A stretch of DNA of 64,000 nt from Sminthopsis crassicaudata (GCF_048593235.1 NC_133620.1:61754852-61818851), one strand, 5' to 3'; shown: positions 156 through 64,000, numbered from the stretch's first letter. A program made the numbers and translations. Notes: a model not told the origin generated them from the letters alone.

Positions 156-671
156 NNNNNNNNNNNNNNNNNNNNNNNNNNNNNNNNNNNNNNNNNNNNN
201 NNNNNNNNNNNNNNNNNNNNNNNNNNNNNNNNNNNNNNNNNNNNNNNNNNNNNNNNNNNNNNNNNNNNNNNNNNNNNNNNNNNNNNNNNNNNNNNNNNNN
301 NNNNNNNNNNNNNNNNNNNNNNNNNNNNNNNNNNNNNNNNNNNNNNNNNNNNNNNNNNNNNNNNNNNNNNNNNNNNNNNNNNNNNNNNNNNNNNNNNNNN
401 NNNNNNNNNNNNNNNNNNNNNNNNNNNNNNNNNNNNNNNNNNNNNNNNNNNNNNNNNNNNNNNNNNNNNNNNNNNNNNNNNNNNNNNNNNNNNNNNNNNN
501 NNNNNNNNNNNNNNNNNNNNNNNNNNNNNNNNNNNNNNNNNNNNNNNNNNNNNNNNNNNNNNNNNNNNNNNNNNNNNNNNNNNNNNNNNNNNNNNNNNNN
601 NNNNNNNNNNNNNNNNNNNNNNNNNNNNNNNNNNNNNNNNNNNNNNNNNNNNNNNNNNNNNNNNNNNNNNN
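156..671. other. Assembly gap (516 N)
   Basis: Run of N. Confidence 0.99.
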
Positions 672-4796: not shown

Positions 4797-4963
4797 NNNN
4801 NNNNNNNNNNNNNNNNNNNNNNNNNNNNNNNNNNNNNNNNNNNNNNNNNNNNNNNNNNNNNNNNNNNNNNNNNNNNNNNNNNNNNNNNNNNNNNNNNNNN
4901 NNNNNNNNNNNNNNNNNNNNNNNNNNNNNNNNNNNNNNNNNNNNNNNNNNNNNNNNNNNNNNN
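4797..4963. other. Assembly gap (167 N)
   Basis: Run of N. Confidence 0.99.
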
Positions 4964-8780: not shown

Positions 8781-9860
8781 GAGAGATTTTGTTTCCTTCT
8801 AGACCTTTTTTCTTAGGTAAAGTCAAGATAAATCACCCAAAGAGCTGTGTGGTAGTGAAAAAAGCCCTGGGTTCTAGTCCAATTCTGCCTGTAGCTCCTT
8901 GTCTTACTTGGGACAAATTATTCAGATAAGTTATTCTTTTGGGTCTCAATGTCTTCATCTATAAAATGATGGAGCTATAGTAAATAAAATTGTTCCTCTT
9001 TTAATTTTATCTTTCAATGTACTCTTAACACCATAAATGATGGCTTGGTCATTGATGTTAAGATTTATAGGGAATGAATATCAACAAAATGTCTGTAGGG
9101 CAACTCTGGGTAAGACCTCTGTGTATGTGCCTAGAGCCAGGTCACTAAAGCAAAGTTTGAGTTGGAAAATTTATTTCTGGGCAGAAAGAGGATAGAAACT
9201 AAGACACTAAACCTTCTCAACTATTAAAAAAAAAAAAAAAACACAACAAAACAACAACAAGTTTTTAGTGCCAAGGTATATAGTAACTGCTAAATGATGT
9301 AAAGGAGAGGGTTTTCATTAATGAAAAGTATTTCTGTTTATCTGTCAGTACACTGCAATCTAATGAGCCCTGGATATTTCCAATTGCCATTGAAAGCTCC
9401 AAGAGATGTTGCTGCCTCCCTCTCTCAGCTTTTCTCTGAGGATCCCGCATGTAGCAGTGTGTACATAGTAGATGGCTTCTGCTGCCCCTGGATTACACTG
9501 CTCCTCCTGTGTCTCATCTTCCTTTTATTTCCTTCTCACATCATCAAAGAACGAACCAATTCTGATGCACCTCACCATCATACTGAGGTCCTTTCCTCTT
9601 TTTGCTTTAAAATTTCCAAAGACTGAGGGATATTGGAGTTGGGCTCTATCCCTCCTTGCACACAAGTGCTAATTTATTTTTAAAATTTGTTACAAGGATG
9701 ACGCTGACTTCTAAATGACTAATAGATTCTTGAATTGCAATTATAATTGCTGAACTGAACATGTCAATCTCATAATCAGTAGGTAGGAGAGTTGATTCCC
9801 AAGCAGCAGAGCCCCAAGATGGAGTGTTCCTCCCTCAACAACGCACTTCCAGGAGGAAAT

Positions 9861-14229: not shown

Positions 14230-14428
14230 NNNNNNNNNNNNNNNNNNNNNNNNNNNNNNNNNNNNNNNNNNNNNNNNNNNNNNNNNNNNNNNNNNNNNNN
14301 NNNNNNNNNNNNNNNNNNNNNNNNNNNNNNNNNNNNNNNNNNNNNNNNNNNNNNNNNNNNNNNNNNNNNNNNNNNNNNNNNNNNNNNNNNNNNNNNNNNN
14401 NNNNNNNNNNNNNNNNNNNNNNNNNNNN
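14230..14428. other. Assembly gap (199 N)
   Basis: Run of N. Confidence 0.99.
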
Positions 14429-43327: not shown

Positions 43328-44720
43328 TCAGACTTGTGGAGGAGGAAAGAATTTGTGGCCAAAGGAGAACTAGAGATCATTATTGGTCACAAAATAGAAA
43401 ATTTTGATTACATCAAATTAAAAAGCTTTTGTACAAACAAAACTAATGCAAACAAGATTAGAAGAGAAGCAACAAATTAGGAAAACATTTTTTACAGTTA
43501 AAGGTTCTGATAAAGGACTAATTTATGAGAAATCAAGCCACTCTCCAATTGATAAATGGTCAAAGGATATGAACAGATAATTTTCAGATGATGAAATTGA
43601 AATTATTTCCACTCATATGAAAGAGTGTTCCAAATCACTACTGATCAGAGAAATGCAAATTAAGACAACTCTGAGATATCACTACACACCTGTCAGATTG
43701 GCTAAGATGACAGGAAAAAATAATGATGAATGTTGGAGGGGATGTGGGAAAACTGGGACACTAATACATTGTTGGTGGAGTTGTGAAAGAATCCAGCCAT
43801 TCTGGAGAGCAATTTGGAACTATGCTCAAAAAGTTATCAAACTGTGCATACCCTTTGATCCAGCAGTGCTACTACTGGGCTTATATCCCAAAGAAATACT
43901 AAAGAAGGGAAAGGGACCTGTATGTACCAAAATGTTTGTGGCAGCTCTTTTCATAGTGGCCAGAAACTAGAAAATGAACGGATGTCCATCAATTGGAGAA
44001 TGGTTGGGTAAATTATGGTATATGAAGGTTATGGAATATTATTGCTCTGTAAGAAATGACCAGCAGGATGAATACAGAGAGGCTTGGAGAGACTTACATC
44101 AACTGCTGCTGAGTGAAATGAGCAGAACCAGAAGATCTCTATACACTTCAACAATACTGTATGAAGATGTATTCTGATGGAAGTGGATATCTTCAACATA
44201 AAGAAGATCCAACTCACTCCCAGTAGATGAATGATGGACAGAAACAACTACACCCAGAGAAGGAACACTGGGAATTGAATGTAAACTGTACTATTGTCTT
44301 TCTACCCAGGTTACTTATACCTTCTAAATCGATTTCTTCCTTAGCAGCAGCAAACAACAACAACAACAAAAATAGGTTCTGCGCACATATATTGTATCTA
44401 GAATATACTATAACATATTTAATATGTATGGGAATACCTTCCATCTAGGGGAGGGGGTAGAGGGAAGGAGGGGAAAATTCGGAACAGAAAGGAGTGCAAA
44501 GAATAATGTTGTAAAAAATTACCTATGCGGGGGCAGCTAGGTGGCACAATGGATAGAGCACCAGCCTTGAATTCAGGAAGACTTGAGTTCAAATCTGGTC
44601 TCAGACACAACACTTCTCTGGGCAAGTCATTTAACCCCAGCCTCAGGATTAAAAAAAAAAAAAAAAATTACCTATGCATATGTACTGTCAAAAAAAAAAG
44701 TTATAATTATAAAATTAATT
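43328..44720 (+). mobile_element. Relatively young 5'-truncated L1 (ORF2 C-terminus plus 3' UTR)
   Basis: ORFs 43617..43970 (REMQIKTTLRYHYTPVRLAKM...CWRGCGKTGTLIHCWW) and 43974..44177 are the L1 ORF2p Cys-rich C-terminus, broken by a stop. Confidence 0.92.
44529..44661 (+). mobile_element. WSINE1-like SINE inserted into an L1 3' end, 16-bp TSD
   Basis: TSD AAAAAATTACCTATGC at 44513-44528 and 44662-44677. Confidence 0.88.
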
Positions 44721-46243
44721 TTAAAAAATTAAAAAAAATTTTTTGCAATATAAAAAAATTAATTTGGAATGATACTAAATAACAACAAAAACAAAACCTA
44801 TTATTATTAATATTTCCAACCAAGAAGGTTGTATGAATAGAGGCAAATTCTTCTAAATTTACTTCAGTAAAAACTTGAAATTCCTACCATTCAAATTGTT
44901 GTTCTGTTTTGCCCAACTTTGTGACCCCACATCAGACAGAATTATGAAGAAATCCAACACAAACAACATTTGCATTAAGTGAAATAGAAAAGGAAGCCAC
45001 AAGCAAATCCAACACAAGAACAGGCAAATTTAATCTCCCCCATCATCATCTGAAATTGGACCTAAACAGAGCCAACAACAAATGAAGAGGGCCAATATAC
45101 AAACAAGATAAATTTAGTTGTCCAGAAGCTCTCAAGTCCCGGATGCCCTGTTTTGGTATTCCAGTAGAGAAGCCCTGAAGAAACTGCTCTCTTATGAATT
45201 TGTCAGCATAGCTAAAGCAGGGATCCTTCCCACAAAATCTAGTCCCTGGCATAAAACCCAAAACAAGGAACTAAATTGGAGAGATCTGTAAATCAAAGAA
45301 AAAAGCAACTAGTATCAAAAGTACTGTCAACCTAGAGATTCCCAAAAGAAGCAAGTAACTCTAATAATTGTAAATACTCAAAGAGGAGAAATATTACATG
45401 CTCTGATCAAGCAATCACTTCTAGACAAAATGTAAATATTTGTCTCCCACAACAAGCATCACACATACAAACATAGAATATACTTTTTGAGATGAAAAGA
45501 GAAAAAAGGTATCATATGAATAAAAATTTTATAATAATACTTTTTTAAATTAGAAAAGTGATCAGATTAGACAACGGGAGAAAAGTGATTGTCAAATGAC
45601 TGGGTAATGACCAAAAATATTGTGGTATACGTACTTCTCTACAATGCTCAGGACAAAGATGCGTTCTGCTCTTTTTGGAATATCGTGTGAAAATAGTTCA
45701 ATAGTAACTCAGCCCTTACAGGAACCTCCTAAAGGGTTCATGATCAAAGGCTATGAGCACAGAGCTCAGGCAACGTGTCTGTAAGGTGGGTCACCTCACC
45801 GGATTTTAAAAGATCTCTATTTAAAATTTGAATCCAATTTATCCTAAAATCAATAAAATTATTTTTAAATTATCTCAGAATTCCAAGGCAAAATTTAACA
45901 TCACAGGTATTCTCTAGGAAAATGTGTTTAATATCATGAAATTTTGTTCCTAAAGAACAGAAGCAAGTCTTGTGAAGAACAAAGTTATGTAAACATAATT
46001 TTTGTGTAACCTATCTCACAAGTAGAAAAGTATTTTGTAAATGTTAAAATGCTACAGAATTGTTTACTACATATACAAGTCATAGCTCTGAAACAAGAGA
46101 ACCTGAGATTGAACTAACATCCCTTTCAGCGACTTAAATCCCTCAGGCCTCTATTTGTTCATCTATAAAAATGAGTTGGCTAGATGAACAACCAAGTCCT
46201 TTTCAACTATAATTTTTATGATGCTAAGCCATACAACCCATCA

Positions 46244-46547
46244 TTAATACATTTTTCTTAGTAATACTACATGATTGTGAATCTTGGAATACCACAAAGT
46301 TGCGGATGACCCAAAGGAGACAATGGACTTAAGTAGGCTGAAGCATAAATTTCCGATAATTATCTATATACAAGGATAATCATAATGGATATCATTCAAA
46401 AAAGGTATTGTCATCAAAGTGGATTAGTCATACATAAAGAAAATACATGTTGTCCAGTATGTATATCTGAGGTTGAAGTTGAACCTCATTAAGCCTTCTT
46501 TGGTTTTGGGGTCAGCACTCTCTCCACTATGCCATGTTTACTTTATA
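46244..46547 (+). repeat. Left arm of a 304-bp perfect inverted duplication
   Basis: Exact reverse complement of 47703..48006, compared line by line. Confidence 0.95.
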
Positions 46548-47702
46548 TAAAAGGAAATTAGGACTCATAATACTGTCTCTTTTAAAGAGAAGTACCCAAA
46601 TATCTTGAAAAGACTTGGGGGGGAGGGGGAGAACACCTCTATATTTCAAATTCAGTTAACATGAAACAAAACAACTATATTACAGGCTTAATTTATGTGC
46701 TAATTTATTTGGAATTGAAGACAAAAGTTGATTCAATAACCTGAATAAAATCAAAATATAAATTGGTAAACAATGAAGCAAAAAGACAAAAGAAAACTAG
46801 CATGGGGTATCACACTGCACTTTGGGGAGAAATATTTATCTTGTTTAAATTTTTGTTTGTTTTTGGTAATTAATTCAACAAAAATTTACAAAACAACTAC
46901 AATGTTCAAAGAACTAAACTAGACACTGGAAACAAAGATCAAACTGAAAAAGACCTTTGCTAGATTGAGGAGAAAGTGAGAGAACAACATGTAGGCAATG
47001 AACATATATTGATTTAAAAAGTAACAAGTGGAGAGGAATCATGCAAAAGAAGAGAGAGCTACATGGCTCAGTGGACAAGAGCACCAAGCCCAGAGTCAGA
47101 AAGACCTGAATTCAAAACTGTCCTCAGACACTTACTAGCTACCTTGTGTGCTTCAGTACCTCTGCCCCCCCCAAAAAAATGCATGGGGTCCTGAAGAGCA
47201 GAACACAACTGCTAAGCCTGAACAACAACACGCAAGAGGCGACTCCTGGGTAGAGCCTTGGAAAAAAGGAGGGATGAGAAGGCAAGCACTGGAGCACCCT
47301 CCCCATTTGTGAACCACTGCCACTTGTGGTTTGGACTTGGATGACTAAGAGAAGTCGATGATTTTGTGCAATGCTGAAGTCAGTGGTCCTCACCCCAAAC
47401 AAAGAACAAACATGCTCCTTTTAAGGTGCATGCAGCAGCCTCCTTCATACTAAGGTTTCCCCCACTAGATTATAAGGTCCTTGAGGGTAGGGACAGTGCT
47501 CTTTTTGTACACCCAGCCCTTAGCACAGTACACAGTACATGCTTAATCAAGGTTTACTAAACTAATTCATTCTTTGTTACCATAAAAAGCATTAAAAATT
47601 TACATTTTCTCCAATCAAACAGGATTAAAGATACTAACAGCTATTTGATCCTCATTACAACTTTGTAACTTTGTATATGCTTTTTTTATCTACTTGAGCA
47701 GG

Positions 47703-48006
47703 TATAAAGTAAACATGGCATAGTGGAGAGAGTGCTGACCCCAAAACCAAAGAAGGCTTAATGAGGTTCAACTTCAACCTCAGATATACATACTGGACAA
47801 CATGTATTTTCTTTATGTATGACTAATCCACTTTGATGACAATACCTTTTTTGAATGATATCCATTATGATTATCCTTGTATATAGATAATTATCGGAAA
47901 TTTATGCTTCAGCCTACTTAAGTCCATTGTCTCCTTTGGGTCATCCGCAACTTTGTGGTATTCCAAGATTCACAATCATGTAGTATTACTAAGAAAAATG
48001 TATTAA
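47703..48006 (-). repeat. Right arm of a 304-bp perfect inverted duplication
   Basis: Exact reverse complement of 46244..46547. Confidence 0.95.
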
Positions 48007-49120
48007 GAGCACCAGCCCTGAAGTCAGGAGAACCTGATATCATTTTTTGCTCCAGGATTACAGAGCTAATAAATGTCTGTCAGAGAAATTGGACTCAGCA
48101 ATTGTGTACTATGATAGGACATCATATTTTTCTGGGGGAAAAATTTGTTACTGTCATGTGCATATAAAAAGCATATGCACTTTAGGGGGACACATTTTTA
48201 TGAAGTTGGGTGTTTTCTTAGCTGAGCCATATGGGTTGATGAGTATAAAAGATTCAACTTCCAAAAGAAAACCACTGTTAATGAGGTGGGACAAAAAAGA
48301 CTGAGTGAAAGATAAGTGATGGCAAAAAACCCAAAAGACAAACTATCTGGAACACTCAAAGAACAAGTGTGGCTAACTTTTAACTGTTTTTTCTAAAGTT
48401 GAATATAGTAATATCAACTTTAAGGAGAAATCTTTCTAAAATGAATTAATATAGTCCCCTTCCTGGAAAAAAAAAAAAAAAAAGACTGAACCCTTTCCTT
48501 CACAACAAAGACCTTTCAAATATTAGTTATTTTTTCTGTAATGGGGATAAATAGAAGCCTTCTCAAAAGATCAGGGGTGAAAGCAAGGATGCTCATTATC
48601 ACCACCATTATTCAATATTGTACAAGAAATGTTAGTTATATCAACAATAGAAAAAGAAATTGACAATTAGAATAGGCAATAAGAGAACAAAATTATCACA
48701 GATGATATGATGGCATATATAAAGAATTTCCTAATAAATTACCTGAAATCATTAATAACTTTAGCAAAGTTTCAGGATACAAAATAAGCTCACATAAATC
48801 AGCATTTTTATATTTTACCAACAAAGCCCAAGAAAGAGAAATTCTATTTAAAATGTCCATAATAAATACTTTCAAGTCTACCTGTCAAGACAAACCTAGG
48901 AATTATATGAACACATTTTTCACACAAATAAAGTCGAGTCTAAACAACTGGAAAAGATATCAATTGCTCATGGATAGATCAAGCCAATATAATTCTACCT
49001 AAATTATTCTAAATATTTATTCAGTACCATCAAAATACCAAAAATTACTTTATATAACTTTAAAAAATTCATCTGGAAGATCAAGAATATTAAGGGAATC
49101 AATTTAAAAATGTGAAGGAA

Positions 49121-49272
49121 GGTGGCGCAGTGGATAAGAGCACCAGCCCTGAAGTCAGGAGAACCTGAGTTCAAATCTGACCTCAGACACTTAATTTAAC
49201 ACTTCCTAGTTGTGTGACCCTGGGCAAGTCACTAAACCCCAACTGCATCAGAAAAAAAAAAAAAAAAAAAAA
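49121..49272 (+). mobile_element. 5'-truncated SINE nested in an old L1
   Basis: GTGAAGGAAGGTGG occurs on both sides; long A tail. Confidence 0.8.
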
Positions 49273-49853
49273 GTGAAGGAAGGTGGTCTAGCAAAACCAG
49301 ATCTCAACCTATATTACAAAGCAGTTAATTTACCAAAACTATCTGGTACTGGCTAAGAAATAAGAGTGGTGGACCAGTGGAATGGATTAGGCATACATTA
49401 CAGAATAATAAATGACCATAGTAACAAACCCAAACATGCAAGCTTTTGGAACAAAAACTCATTATATGACAACTCCCTGCACCCTCACCCCCCCAAAAAA
49501 AATTGCTGGGAAAAATGATAAATAGTATGGCAGAAAATGGGTTGGAAAACATCTCATACCACTATATACCTAGATAAGGTCCAAATGGATACATAATATA
49601 CACATAAAGGATGAAACTATAAGAAATTAGGAGAGATGCAATAGTATATTTGTCAGATCTATGAATAAAAGAATTTAGGACCAAAGAAAATAGAGACAGC
49701 ATTATAAGATGTAAAACATAATTTTGATTACATAAAATTAAGTTTTTGCAAAAACAAAACCAAAGCAACAAAAATTGAAAGGAAAGCAAAAAGCTGGGGG
49801 GGGGGGGGGAGGAGTAGAAATTATTCCCAATTGATAGTCAAAAGATATAAACA

Positions 49854-59995: not shown

Positions 59996-60952
59996 AAAGA
60001 ACTCATCAATTCAGAAACAAAAAAAATGAAGCACCCAAACTTCGAACCAACGTAAGAAAAAAGCTGGCACCGAAAGATTCTGGGCCAAGTCCTGAAAAGC
60101 AAAATTACAACACAGCGTCAGGAGCCAGGAGGGCAGCAGTTGTATTCCTGGATCTGACCACATGTGCCTTGGAGAAACAGACTCGGTGGAGTCGGGTTTG
60201 GGGGGTTTTTTGGGCCAGATTTAATGGCACTTCTTTGCCATAGGTCTCGGTCCAAAAGGAAAAAAACCGTGTTTGACTGGGTTCGGTCCTTTTTGTTTTG
60301 CACACGTGACCGTGCCACTTCCAGTTGTCATTTTAGGGCATAAACAAGGCAGAAGTGGACGCTCCAGGGGGTCCTCCCCAAGTTCACGGTCACACGCACA
60401 GTGGGTGGCTAAGACGGAGACGCCTCTCCAGGGCACCGGCTATCCCCTTCCCCACTACTCGGGGTCGGGCTAAATAAAACGCCGCCCTCCACACCCTGGG
60501 ATCTCAGGGCCCAGACCCAAGTCCCAGCAGGGAACCCCAGAGGGAGGGAGGTTGGGGGGGAGCTTGCAGGGCTCCCTAGGCGAAGGGGCAGCCCGAGGCG
60601 GCGGCTCTTCTCCGCGGCTGCGGGGTGGTGAAGGGGCGGGGCATTTGCCGCGGGTCCGAGCAGCCCCCAGTCCTAATCAATCAATCACTCCACTAAGTAG
60701 CCGTCGGGCTCCCGGCTCCCCACCGCCGCTGCCGCCGCCGCCGCCGGGCGGGTCCGCAGACGGCCGCTCGAGGGCAGGGCGGAGCCCGGCCCAGGTCTCC
60801 CCCCACCCCAACCCGGGCGGCGGAGCCACTCGAGGCCGGCGGAGGCCTGAGGCCTAGCGGCGGAAGCCCAAGCTGAGAACGGAGCCTCCCCGCGCTTCCC
60901 GGCCGCGGCCCCCATTGTTCCCTTCGCCCGCGGCGGCCTCCTCCTCACTCAC

Positions 60953-61350
60953 CGCGCCGGTCCGAGCGGCAGCGCCTCTCAGCTCCGGACCCCCGCGGCC
61001 GCCGCCGCCGCCGCCGCCGTCACGGTCCCCGCCGCCGCCGCCCCCGCTGCTGCCGCCGCCGCCGCCTCGGACCCGGGCCGCCGGGCCACGGCCCCCGCCG
61101 CCGCCTGCGCCGCCTCCCAGCTCCCACCTGCTGCTGCCGAGGCCGCTCCGGCAGCAGGGGCCATCTTGTTAACCAGCCTCTTCCTCCCCCGCCTGCGCCG
61201 CCACCGCCTCCCCGCCGCTCGGGGTCCTGGGCGCCTTCCTCTTCCTCCTTCTCCTCCTCCTCCTCCTCTTCTTCCTCCGGCTGCAGACGCCGCCGCTGCC
61301 GCTGCCCCTGCCCGCCGCGGCGGCTCTGGGCCGAGACCCCGCCGCGGCTC
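60953..61350 (-). other. RC3H1: RC3H1 non-coding exon 1 (5' UTR); 5' end/TSS approximate
   Basis: Lies in the CpG island. Consensus donor G|GTGAGT at 60953/60952 on the minus strand. A YY1-like AAGATGGC motif lies within it. Confidence 0.7.
60979..61164 (-). other. Candidate uORF (61 aa, poly-Ala rich) in exon 1
   Basis: aacaagATGGcc (A at -3, G at +4); 186 nt ending in TGA, 26 nt before the exon 1 donor. Translation is not shown. Confidence 0.45.
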
Positions 61351-61369
61351 CTCCCCTTCCGAAGGGGAG

Positions 61370-61750
61370 GGAGGAGGAGGGAAGGGGAGGGGAGAAGGAA
61401 GGGAGGGGGAGGGGTAGTAAGGAGAGAGGAGGGAGGGGAGGGGCAGGAGAGCAGAGAGGAGAGGAGAAGCGGGAGGGGGAGGAGAGGGATGGAGAGGAAA
61501 GAAATAGAGGAAGGGGAAAAGTGGAGAGAAAAGAAAGAAAGGATGGAGAGGACAGGACAGAGAAACTGTAGAGAAGGGAGGAAGAGGAAGAGAGGAGGAA
61601 TGGAGAGGAAAAGAAAGGAAGAGGGAGAGGAGGGGAACAGGAAGGGTAGATGAGGGAGGAAGGGAAGGAAAAGAGGAGGGGAGGGAGGACAGGAAAGAGA
61701 AGGGGAAAGGAGGAGGGAAGGAGACAGGGAGGGAGGAGAGAAAAAAAGAA
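61370..61750 (+). repeat. ~380-bp GA-rich polypurine low-complexity tract
   Basis: Almost only G and A on the + strand. Confidence 0.9.
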
Positions 61751-64000
61751 GCCCTGAGTCACCTGAGATCCTGGCTGCCCGCGCCTCGTCACCCTCAAAC
61801 CCCCCGGGACCAGGGAGCCGCCCCACCCCGACAGTCCACCTTGACCTAAGGGTCCAGAGCGAAGTGGAAAATTGGGACGCGTGCGCTGACGTTTGTAAAG
61901 CTCGCCCCAGTTCTTCAACCAGCTGTCCGCCCCCTCCCCCGCTGCGCCCTCCGCCCCGCACCGGCTCTGGGGCACTGCGGACCCCCGACAACCCCCCACG
62001 TGCGCACACGCACGGACACCCCCGGCGCCGGCCCCCCTCCAAACCCTGCTCCCGCGGGGCAGCCGCAGTAGAAGCCTGTCCGGTGACTTAGCCGGGCGTC
62101 CAGATCTCCCGGCCCTCGCCCCCTGCCCCGAGGCGTATTACTGAGGAGTCCGGAGCGGGTGGGGGATGGGCGAGGTGTTGGGCCGAGTGTAAAAGCGGGA
62201 CGTCTCGGGGGTTAAGGCTGATATAATGGAGTGTAAAGTTTGAAAAAAAAAAAAAAAAAAAAAAAAACTCGGGAGTTTTAACTCCTTGGCAAGAATTAAA
62301 GCAGGAGGCAGAATTCTTTGAAGTCTGGTCCTGGCCGGGACACGGCGTATTCCGGGTCCCAGAACCCGAGGGAAGCGCGCCCAGCCCCCGCCGCCCCGAG
62401 AGCTCAGCCCTCTGACTTTACTCCCGGGCGCTTCAACCGCTTTCCCTCAAGTTTTCACCAAGACGAAAGTGATGTGGTTTTCTCTGCTTATCCCCCTCGC
62501 CCCCCCCCCCCCAAGGCCAAGTGTACGAAGTCCCGCCTTAAAGGTGCAGTCCTATTTCACCTTTACGGAGAGGGAAACTTTATCGAATTAACAAGGCCTG
62601 TTTGTTTATCCTGGAGATACTAACGTCCCGCTCCGCCACCGGTCCCTGTCCAGATGACCTTTCGATGCCCTCTACCACACTCCCAAGAGGCCGCCAGAAG
62701 GCCCGCGGATGCGCCTTTCTCAGAGAGACTGGGATTTAAAACTGCCGGGGGGGATGAAGCTGCCCTTTATTTCTCCATCCATTCAGCCGCAACCCCAAGG
62801 CTACTGACAACCGAGCCGTCCAACTAGCCCAGGTTCGCTTTGCGTGAGCTTGCTCTCCCCCAGCGGCCCCGGGGCCTCTGCCCCCTGCTAGGAAAAACAT
62901 TAATCTGTTACTCCCGCTTTCCCTCCTCCTCCCTCCTCCCCCCTCCCGGGGAACCTTCCATAACAGAAGGCTTCAGCTGCTGTTGCTAGGCAAACATGCC
63001 AACTCTTCCTATTTAGGGAAAGCGAGTCTCTCACCCAACATCTCTTGAAAACCACCTCGATAATTAAAAAAAAAATGCAAACCAGCTAACAAAGTAGGAC
63101 ACCACTGAGTTGACCCACCCCCACAGACTATTTTAAACTTAAGTTTTAAAATTAAAATAAAAACTTAAAAAATTAAACTTAAATTCGTTTTCCAGTTACT
63201 CTCATTAAAATTCACTCGGTTTAATCATGGAGGGGTTTCCCCAAATTCATTTTCACGATGCGCCTTTTATAACACACTCCAGTTAAATTAGGCTGCAGGA
63301 ATGCAAATATTAAATCCACGAAGAGCGCTGTTCAATCTTAACCAAAAAATTGGCAAGAGTCAAAAGTTTTTAAGTGAAAAATTAATTTTTTTAAATTTAA
63401 AACTGGGCTAGATTAGAAATGACAAAGTCTAATCTGATGGAATTATTTTTCACTGAGCACATTGCATTTTTTTTTGCATACTGAATTAACTAATTTTTAA
63501 GAAGTGTATCATTAAGTATAAAGTGTTGTACTATTAAGAACATAAAGTTGACAGTTGAAACTGGTCTTTCTGCAAGGTTGATTATTGCAATTTTGCTTGG
63601 GCTCTCTGTGCTTTAATCTCTCCTTCAGGCAGGTTTGGCAGGATGGATACAAGAGCAGCTTGGGAGGAAATGATTGCAGTATTTATAACAAAAAATAATC
63701 CTACAATTCTAGTTACATTCAATGGGCTCTCTGAAAAAGCAAGGGTTATGAGATTTATGGGAGAATTTGTGCCAAATGATTTAGTTTATTTAGAAGGAAA
63801 AAAATATGGCTGAGACATAGATTATACTGGGTTTTATTCCCAAATTTATTACTCAGTCTAAGAAATATGGCTAGTAAATGCATTTCTCTTTTCCGAATTT
63901 GTCCTTTTATATTTATTGTACTTCTCAAGGGATTAAGCATTTGAATATTATCTGAGTGAAAAATGATACAACTAATATAAACTTCAATAAGAATATGAAA

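What the first reader, a model, noticed from the sequence alone, without database searches (positions are those of the whole stretch)
46244..48006. 304-bp, 100%-identical inverted duplication in RC3H1 intron 1
Seen: 46244..46547 is the exact reverse complement of 47703..48006, with a 1155-bp spacer. I found no mismatches, whereas the SINE copies here differ from one another at several positions. Most of the duplicated sequence is not a repeat I recognise; only ~30 bp at the inner end looks like a SINE head. Inference: this is either a very recent, possibly polymorphic, inverted duplication or an assembly artefact. If real, the pre-mRNA could fold into a 304-bp perfect duplex. Such duplexes are known ADAR substrates and dsRNA-sensor ligands, and in DNA they are cruciform/instability hot spots. 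That would be notable in an immune-regulating gene.
Basis: partly seen in the sequence, partly recalled or inferred. Interest (0 to 1): 0.7.

Follow-up and report, generated by a model that had tools for sequence, protein, structure and literature searches.

The report
Young inverted duplication in Roquin intron
A 304-base piece of the first intron of the immune-regulator gene Roquin-1 sits a second time, backwards and letter-perfect, 1.2 kb away. It is most likely the scar of a recent DNA-copying accident, an ordinary kind of mutation whose one notable effect is a perfect hairpin in the unspliced RNA.

Summary
46244-46547 is the reverse complement of 47703-48006 (304/304), with a 1155-bp spacer. 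The boundaries are sharp, there is no other copy in the window, and no N run lies nearby.

The most informative feature is the outer junction of the right arm. The arm's last 3 bases (TAA) and the next 31 bases are identical to a SINE 1131 bp downstream (49135-49168). Fifteen other SINE copies differ there by at least 3 bases. Microhomology plus a short templated insertion from nearby is the signature of fold-back or template-switch repair. I therefore read the right arm as the new copy.

The spacer keeps the strand composition of the rest of the intron. This argues against a staggered-break inversion and against a mis-oriented contig.

The gene is Roquin-1 on the minus strand, and the repeat lies in intron 1. 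The pre-mRNA folds in silico into a 304-bp perfect duplex. ADAR editing is plausible. Cytoplasmic sensing and cruciform fragility are not well supported.

The scan has noted similar inverted duplications elsewhere in this genome. This is a new instance of a known mutation class, of low to moderate interest.

The parts
46244..46547 (.). Left arm of the inverted repeat. Inferred to be the original (template) copy.
   Evidence: exact reverse complement of 47703-48006. Its role as template is inferred from the junction anatomy at the other arm.
46548..47702 (.). Unduplicated 1155-bp spacer, the inferred fold-back loop. It contains a SINE at about 47057-47240 (+) and an older SINE-like tail at about 47400-47570.
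   Evidence: Its AT skew is +0.163, like the rest of intron 1 (mean +0.127, sd 0.080; 0 of 192 windows at or below -0.163), so it is not recently inverted.
47703..48006 (.). Right arm of the inverted repeat. Inferred to be the newly synthesised inverted copy.
   Evidence: Its outer end coincides with the start of a templated SINE-derived stretch.
48004..48037 (+). 34 nt identical to the SINE copy 1131 bp downstream. The first 3 nt (TAA, 48004-48006) are shared with the end of the arm and form the microhomology. The remaining 31 nt are read as a templated insertion.
   Evidence: 34/34 to 49135-49168, against 81-91% to other copies; alignment showing the GGAGAACC variant only in these two; 0 mismatches to 49138, at least 3 to the 15 other copies.
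49135..49168 (+). Inferred donor of the templated stretch, inside a complete SINE insertion (about 49126-49272) that has its own target-site duplication.
   Evidence: the sequence GTGAAGGAAGGTGG occurs at 49112-49125 and again at 49273-49286, flanking the SINE and its poly(A)..
37219..37449 (-). First coding exon of the host gene (Roquin-1, RING finger). It places the repeat upstream of the ATG exon, in intron 1.
   Evidence: translation [17 protein letters not shown]...; 4txa_A Roquin-1 residues 1-77, E 3.6e-50.

Best explanation
This is a real, young inverted duplication made in one repair or replication accident of the fold-back (snap-back) / template-switch type. A 3' end at about 47702 on the top strand, from a break or a collapsed fork, folded back on its own strand 1155 nt upstream. 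It copied 304 nt of 46547->46244 backwards, which produced the right arm. It then switched through a 3-nt TAA microhomology to the SINE 1.13 kb ahead and copied 31 nt. Finally it rejoined the downstream sequence near 48038-48043. The net effect is an insertion of about 335-340 bp. Shown: the anatomy and the identities. Inferred: the order of events and which arm is the copy (about 0.75 given that the event is real). The consequence is that the Roquin-1 pre-mRNA (minus strand) carries a perfect 304-bp stem with a 1155-nt loop inside intron 1. This stem is a plausible nuclear ADAR substrate that is removed with the intron, and it probably has no effect on the gene.
For: The IR is perfect with sharp boundaries. 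The right arm's outer end overlaps by 3 nt a 34-nt stretch identical to the nearest downstream SINE copy at 49135-49168. That stretch includes a variant seen in no other of 16 copies, and it is an internal SINE piece with neither head nor tail, so it is not an ordinary SINE insertion. The spacer's strand composition matches the intron, with a Gaussian likelihood ratio of about 700 for 'not inverted'. Its SINE has the majority orientation of that family in intron 1. Together these point to a duplication, not an inversion. Precedent exists: human fold-back inverted duplications always carry an unduplicated spacer of 766-70,466 bp, have 2-8 bp of microhomology, and some have inserted sequence at the junction (PMC3907307). 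Snap-back and templated insertions at breaks are well documented (PMC2943611, PMC4912351, PMC11724301). Earlier notes of this scan report similar inverted duplications elsewhere in the same genome, and one follow-up reports that a related species keeps the original layout. Those notes are unchecked by me.
Against: Exact look-ups of ORFs from the region and of six control intronic ORFs found nothing in the protein collection. The 31-nt identity to the neighbouring SINE is not proof: 1 of 120 pairs among the other copies is also identical over that segment. Microhomology at the fold-back junction (47702/47703) cannot be measured without the ancestral allele. The old SINE head inside the arm is in the majority (+) orientation in the right arm, which weakly favours the opposite polarity, with the left arm as the copy. 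Documented snap-back tracts are mostly 5-34 nt (PMC11724301), so 304 nt needs a more processive, MMBIR-like synthesis. If the genome is the published dunnart assembly (Flye on noisy long reads plus Pilon), multi-mapped short reads could have polished two near-identical arms to perfect identity.
Confidence: 0.6

Rival explanations
1. Assembly or read artefact: only one arm exists in the animal. The second arm would come from a chimeric or fold-back long read that was used as draft sequence or gap fill, and short-read polishing would then have made it identical to the true copy.
For: Perfect identity is what an artefact gives. ONT genomic reads contain about 0.6% fold-back artefacts, and one illustrated example has about 2 kb between its segments (PMC12870357). 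Other notes on this genome report homopolymer frameshifts typical of noisy-read assemblies. No read evidence could be obtained.
Against: No N run or gap lies at or near any of the four junctions. The arms are 1155 bp apart, whereas typical fold-back artefacts map within 200 bp on the opposite strand and fold near the read's midpoint. The false segment would have to be a 304-nt piece plus a 31-nt piece from 1.1 kb downstream, joined through microhomology. That looks like polymerase template switching on a real molecule, not like ligation chimeras or assembler errors. A mis-oriented small contig is contradicted by the spacer's strand composition. A single aberrant read should not survive a consensus of many reads.
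Confidence: 0.2
2. The same fold-back/template-switch mechanism with the opposite polarity. The right arm is ancestral and the left arm is the inverted copy, inserted between 46243 and 46548. The SINE piece at 48007-48037 would then be an old fragment that only happens to abut the arm.
For: The old tRNA-derived SINE head in the arm is in + orientation in the right arm, the majority orientation of SINEs in this intron. Identity over 31 nt between two SINE copies can occur by chance (1 of 120 pairs).
Against: The duplication would have to end, by coincidence, exactly where an isolated internal 31-34-nt SINE fragment begins. That fragment would also have to be identical to the nearest SINE copy, including a variant private to it. 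No microhomology or filler is visible at 46243/46244.
Confidence: 0.12
3. Staggered-break micro-inversion. A segment of about 1.46 kb was inverted after staggered single-strand breaks at one end, and fill-in of the 304-nt overhangs left an inverted duplication bracketing the flipped segment.
For: The structure (inverted duplicates bracketing a segment) is exactly what that model produces (PMC1885836).
Against: The bracketed segment keeps the A-over-T excess of the surrounding intron: +0.163 against a mean of +0.127, sd 0.080. In the opposite orientation it would fall outside all 192 windows tested. Its SINE has the same orientation as 7 of the 8 other copies of that family in intron 1.
Confidence: 0.05
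4. A non-autonomous DNA transposon with 304-bp terminal inverted repeats, for example inserted at TTAA.
For: The arms begin and end with TTAA, which being palindromic could hide a piggyBac-type target-site duplication.
Against: No third copy of the arm exists in 64 kb. The arms contain an old SINE fragment and the spacer is made of SINEs, with no ORF over 87 aa, so this is ordinary genomic DNA, not a transposon body. The ends (TACATTTTTC...) lack the CCC...GGG ends of piggyBac; that motif is from my own knowledge and was not tested against a library. The hypothesis also does not explain the neighbour-derived SINE piece at the right end.
Confidence: 0.03

Closest known systems
Fold-back inverted duplications with an unduplicated spacer (Hermetz et al. 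2014, PMC3907307)
   Same: An inverted copy in cis is separated from its template by a normal-copy spacer in the kb range (766-70,466 bp there, 1155 bp here). Junctions carry short microhomology or inserted sequence. The proposed route is resection, intrastrand fold-back and synthesis.
   Different: Those events duplicate megabases, form dicentric chromosomes and end in terminal deletions. Here synthesis stopped after 304 nt and rejoined the same chromosome, so the result is a small interstitial insertion.
Snap-back / synthesis-dependent MMEJ and polymerase-theta-type templated insertions (PMC2943611, PMC4912351, PMC5068794, PMC11724301)
   Same: A 3' end primes on its own strand or on the other break end through a few bases of homology. 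It copies a short tract, dissociates and re-anneals. The scars are inverted and direct templated insertions drawn from sequence near the break. The 31-nt SINE-derived tract with TAA microhomology fits this size range.
   Different: Reported inverted tracts are mostly about 5-34 bp and lie next to the break. Here the inverted tract is 304 nt and its template lies 1.2 kb away, which points to a more processive, replication-type (FoSTeS/MMBIR-like) synthesis. The polymerase involved cannot be inferred from sequence.
Staggered-break inversions with inverted duplications at the breakpoints (Ranz et al. 2007, PMC1885836)
   Same: Identical inverted copies bracket a unique segment.
   Different: That model requires the bracketed segment to be inverted. 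The strand-composition test here says it is not.
Inverted SINE/Alu pairs in introns as ADAR-edited dsRNA (Barak et al. 2020, PMC7006430)
   Same: Both arms lie in one intron of one pre-mRNA and pair into a long duplex. Long near-perfect duplexes are tolerated in pre-mRNAs but purged from mature mRNAs.
   Different: The arms are not two independent transposon insertions but one locus copied once. They are therefore 100% complementary over 304 bp, well above the 72-94% complementarity of the SINE pairs in this window. Editing was not tested.

Membership tests
Fold-back / template-switch inverted duplication | An inverted copy of nearby sequence on the same chromosome, with sharp boundaries | tested here: met
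   304/304, with no similarity beyond the boundaries.
Fold-back / template-switch inverted duplication | An unduplicated, uninverted spacer (the fold-back loop) between template and copy | tested here: met
   The 1155-bp spacer is single-copy in the window. Its strand composition matches the surrounding intron. Its size is within the 766-70,466 bp range of PMC3907307.
Fold-back / template-switch inverted duplication | Microhomology and/or short templated insertions from nearby sequence at the switch junctions | tested here: met
   Outer junction of the right arm: a 3-nt TAA overlap plus 31 nt identical to the SINE 1131 bp downstream. The inner junction (47702/47703) cannot be scored without the ancestral allele.
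Fold-back / template-switch inverted duplication | A pre-duplication allele exists in relatives or in the population | not testable with these tools
No eukaryotic genome collection is available. Exact ORF look-ups were blank.
Staggered-break inversion | The segment between the inverted duplicates is inverted relative to the ancestral order | tested here: not met
   This is an indirect test. The spacer's AT skew is +0.163, against an intron mean of +0.127 (sd 0.080). No window is at or below -0.163, and the likelihood ratio is about 700 against inversion. An outgroup would be the direct test.
TIR DNA transposon / MITE | Target-site duplication flanking the terminal inverted repeats | tested here: inconclusive
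   No direct repeat lies outside the arms. A palindromic TTAA at both arm ends could be either part of the IR or a TSD.
TIR DNA transposon / MITE | Multiple dispersed copies, and an element-specific rather than host-derived body | tested here: not met
   Within the 64-kb window only, there is no third copy. The arms and spacer consist of old SINE fragments and unique intron sequence, with no ORF over 87 aa. Genome-wide copy number was not testable.
Long-read fold-back / assembly artefact | The two inverted segments map to the same place (within about 200 bp), or a gap or contig end lies at the junction | tested here: not met
   The arms are 1155 bp apart and there is no N within 30 kb. The criterion is from PMC12870357.
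Long-read fold-back / assembly artefact | Junction-spanning reads are absent, or depth is halved on the arms | not testable with these tools
ADAR-substrate intronic dsRNA | Both arms lie on one transcript and pair as a long duplex | tested here: met
   This is shown in silico only. The repeat lies between the ATG exon (37449) and the CpG-rich exon 1 (about 61 kb) of a minus-strand Roquin-1 gene. The MFE of the sense RNA pairs 304/304 in register, with a duplex energy of -545 kcal/mol. Splice sites were not mapped.
ADAR-substrate intronic dsRNA | Clustered A-to-G mismatches in RNA-seq over both arms | not testable with these tools
   No runs were available.

The most novel reading that the evidence does not exclude
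The duplication is real and is polymorphic or lineage-specific in this marsupial, and its perfect 304-bp intronic hairpin is biologically active. It could be hyper-edited and slow or divert splicing of Roquin-1 intron 1. It could also be diced into endogenous small RNAs. Either way it would be a natural allele that changes the dosage of a key repressor of immune mRNAs.
Probability: 0.04. Interest if true: 0.6.

Novelty: new member of a known kind. Interest (0 to 1): 0.25.

Why it matters
If real, this is a clean germline example of a multi-step template-switch scar: an inverted 304-nt copy, then a 31-nt direct copy from 1.1 kb ahead, then rejoining. All templates are still present beside it, which makes it useful as a teaching or benchmark case for how small inverted duplications and long perfect hairpins arise in mammalian genomes. 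Together with the other inverted duplications that the scan has noted in this genome, it could feed a census of such events. It also gives a natural perfect long dsRNA in a pre-mRNA, on which ADAR hyper-editing could be measured in a marsupial. It does not by itself say anything about Roquin function. If it is an artefact, it flags a local error in the assembly.

Tried and rejected

(2) Independent contigs through the protein collection. Exact look-up of four ATG-ORFs from the stretch and six control intronic ORFs found none. The collection evidently does not hold spurious intronic ORFs of this species, so I did not spend the large protein searches. I record it here openly.

(3) Old repeats spanning a junction, to tell ancestral from new junctions. 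BLAST of the four present junctions and four hypothetical ancestral junctions against the rest of the window gave nothing that spans a junction convincingly. One hit reaches 14 nt into the arm at 80% identity, which is chance level.

(4) The idea that an old MIR-like SINE is split by the whole 1.8-kb block, which would make the block a single insertion. I rejected it. Comparison with the copies at 8921-9014 and 34190-34400 shows that the flank SINE ends at about 46228, before the arm.

I used them only as leads.

(6) Rfam scan of 45500-49500 at E<=1: no family, so no known structured RNA or miRNA.

(7) Decayed old palindrome homogenised by gene conversion. Rejected, because no residual inverted similarity exists beyond the arms.

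(8) L1 twin-priming. Rejected on reading: there is no poly(A) or poly(T) and no L1 sequence next to either arm, and the unit is made of intron sequence and SINEs.

(9) Pfam on the ORF at 43617-43967: no hit.

Exons were searched separately by reference. I touched no N stretch and met no contig that I took for human.

Full report
Observation. The repeat finder reports one inverted pair in 45000-49500: arms 46244-46547 and 47703-48006, 304 nt, 100% complementary, 1155 nt apart. A direct string comparison confirms this. In the whole 64-kb window it is the longest and the only perfect inverted repeat. All other pairs are SINE or LINE copies of 72-94% over 71-197 nt. BLAST finds no third copy of the arm in the window. 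Complementarity ends abruptly. The 20-30 bases beyond each boundary are unrelated. Local alignments of 300 bp beyond the outer and inner boundaries score below shuffled controls (z -0.8 and -1.0). This is therefore one discrete copying event. It is not the conserved core of an old, decayed palindrome, and it is not a pair of independent repeats. The only N runs are at 156-671, 4797-4963 and 14230-14428, more than 30 kb away. I left them untouched.

Context. Exon-sized ORFs on the minus strand carry the Roquin ROQ domain (PF21206, E 2e-28 and 4.6e-06). The first coding exon starts with ATG at 37449 on the minus strand and translates as [17 protein letters not shown].... It matches residues 1-77 of Roquin-1 in PDB entry 4txa at E 3.6e-50. 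The GC-rich region with long low-complexity ORFs at 60.5-62.6 kb is where another note of this scan places exon 1 (s1-180402). I did not map splice sites. An earlier follow-up note calls this genome the fat-tailed dunnart (s1-153264). I did not verify the species. The SINE type and the very large chromosome fit a dasyurid marsupial.

Anatomy of the junctions. Immediately after the right arm comes a 31-nt internal piece of the common tRNA-derived SINE. It has neither the SINE's head nor its tail, so it is not a normal SINE insertion. Together with the last three bases of the arm (TAA), it gives 34 nt (48004-48037) that are 34/34 identical to the SINE copy at 49135-49168, 1131 bp downstream in the same orientation. 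The other copies in the window are 81-91% identical over this piece. In an alignment of 13 copies, the GGAGAACC variant is shared only by these two. A mismatch scan of the whole window gives 0 mismatches to 49138 and at least 3 to the 15 other copies. The donor is a complete insertion with its own target-site duplication: GTGAAGGAAGGTGG at 49112-49125 and at 49273-49286. The identity is strong but not proof, because among the other 16 copies 1 of 120 pairs is also identical over this segment. The point that persuades me is the coincidence of positions. The inverted copy ends exactly where the neighbour-derived piece begins, with a 3-nt overlap common to both. That pattern is what a nascent strand leaves when it stops copying one template and re-anneals by microhomology on another.

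Inversion or duplication? In that model the bracketed segment is flipped (PMC1885836). The same layout would also arise if an assembler placed a small overlapping contig backwards. I tested both with strand composition. The + strand of this intron is consistently A-rich over T. Eighteen non-overlapping 1155-bp windows have a mean AT skew of +0.127 with sd 0.080. Of 192 sliding windows, 95% are positive and the minimum is -0.029. The spacer has +0.163, and its non-SINE left part has +0.24. If it had been flipped recently, it would have carried -0.163 in its long-term orientation, which is outside everything observed. The Gaussian likelihood ratio is about 700 for 'not inverted'. The SINE inside the spacer also has the + orientation of 7 of the 8 other copies of that family in intron 1. 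The spacer is therefore in place, and the event added an inverted copy.

Which arm is new? No old repeat spans any present or hypothetical ancestral junction. My attempt to show that a flanking MIR-like SINE is split by the block failed, because that SINE ends at about 46228. The polarity therefore rests on the complex junction at 48004-48037, which marks the right arm's outer end as a new joint. A weak counter-argument is that the old SINE head inside the arm has the majority orientation in the right arm. I put the right arm as the copy at about 0.75, given that the event is real.

Mechanism (inferred). A 3' end at about 47702, from a resected break or a stalled fork, folded back on its own strand and primed just right of 46547. 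Any priming microhomology is now hidden inside the arms' inner ends, which read ...TTTATA / TATAAA.... The end copied 304 nt backwards and dissociated at 46244. It re-annealed through TAA on the exposed strand of the SINE 1.13 kb ahead and copied 31 nt. It then rejoined near 48038-48043. All templates lie within 1.5 kb of the presumed break, which is within known resection lengths. Human fold-back inverted duplications show the same logic. In all 21 sequenced junctions an unduplicated spacer of 766-70,466 bp was found, with 2-8 bp of inverted microhomology in 13 and inserted sequence in 5 (PMC3907307). Snap-back and templated insertions at breaks are documented in flies, yeast and mammalian cells (PMC2943611, PMC4912351, PMC5068794, PMC11724301). 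The inverted tracts there are mostly 5-34 bp, so a 304-nt tract suggests a more processive, MMBIR-like synthesis.

Age. Zero differences in 304 bp (2 CpGs, 34% GC) give a median age of 0.4-1.1 Myr and a 95% upper bound of 1.6-4.9 Myr, for 1-3e-9 substitutions per site per year. Two caveats apply. Gene conversion between the arms could keep them identical. If the assembly was polished with multi-mapping short reads, small differences could have been erased; the published dunnart assemblies used Flye on ONT/PacBio CLR reads followed by Pilon.

Real or artefact? The question therefore stays open. Several points argue against an artefact. No gap lies near the repeat. The arms are 1155 bp apart, whereas typical fold-back artefact reads fold onto themselves within 200 bp (PMC12870357). 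The mis-orientation scenario fails the skew test. A false segment would have to consist of a 304-nt piece and a 31-nt piece from opposite sides joined by microhomology, which looks like polymerase behaviour on a real molecule, not like ligation chimeras or assembler errors. Other inverted duplications noted by this scan in the same genome include older, diverged ones and one for which a follow-up reports the ancestral layout in a related species (s1-189972, s1-180378, s1-153264). I have not checked those notes, and they count only as a base rate. I put an artefact at about 0.2.

Consequences. The sense (minus-strand) RNA of 46144-48106 folds with all 304 arm positions paired in register. The duplex energy is -545 kcal/mol and the MFE of the 1963-nt segment is -891 kcal/mol. 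Such a duplex is a plausible substrate for nuclear ADARs. Long near-perfect duplexes are tolerated in pre-mRNAs precisely because introns do not reach cytoplasmic sensors (PMC7006430; PMC13508285). In yeast, IR-driven fragility drops about 20-fold when the spacer grows from 12 to 200 bp and about 31-fold at 1.5 kb, although distant repeats can still interact in long single-stranded DNA (PMC10164571). Rfam finds no known RNA family in the region. Nothing connects the repeat to Roquin's function beyond its position.

Verdict. The best reading is a real, young fold-back/template-switch inverted duplication (0.6), with assembly artefact as the main rival (0.2). It is a new instance of a known mutation class, and the scan has already noted the same class at other places in this genome. 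Interest is low to moderate.

Noticed in passing
window 49112-49286: A complete young SINE insertion (about 49126-49272 with a poly(A) tail) is flanked by a 14-bp target-site duplication, GTGAAGGAAGGTGG. It is the inferred donor of the 31-nt piece at 48007-48037.
   Followed up: partly
window 37600-60900: The + strand of the whole intron is A-rich over T (mean AT skew +0.127), so the sense strand is T-rich. Copies of the common SINE are in + orientation (antisense to the gene) in 8 of 9 cases in intron 1. This shows a strand asymmetry and an orientation bias, and it proved usable as an orientation clock for small segments.
   Followed up: partly
window 156-671, 4797-4963, 14230-14428: Three N runs of 516, 167 and 199 bases lie in the 3' part of the gene.
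   Followed up: no
window 43617-43970 (+): A 117-aa ORF (MKECSKSLLIREMQIKTTLRYHYTPVRLAKM...) looks to me like the C-terminal part of an L1 ORF2. Pfam gave no hit at E<=0.01.
   Followed up: partly
window 29330-29382 (+): A (TG)n-type dinucleotide microsatellite is visible as a VCVCVC... run at the end of the ORF at 29095-29382.
   Followed up: no
window 60500-62650: A very GC-rich region with long low-complexity ORFs on both strands (Pro/Ser/Leu- and Arg/Gly-rich). It is presumably the CpG-island promoter and first exon of the Roquin-1 gene. Another note of the scan (s1-180402) concerns a GCC-repeat uORF here.
   Followed up: no
window 46084-46228 (+) and 8921-9014 (+): Two old MIR-like SINE copies share a tail that starts at the motif catctataaaa(a)tga. 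The first ends about 15 bp before the left arm and is not split by the duplication.
   Followed up: yes
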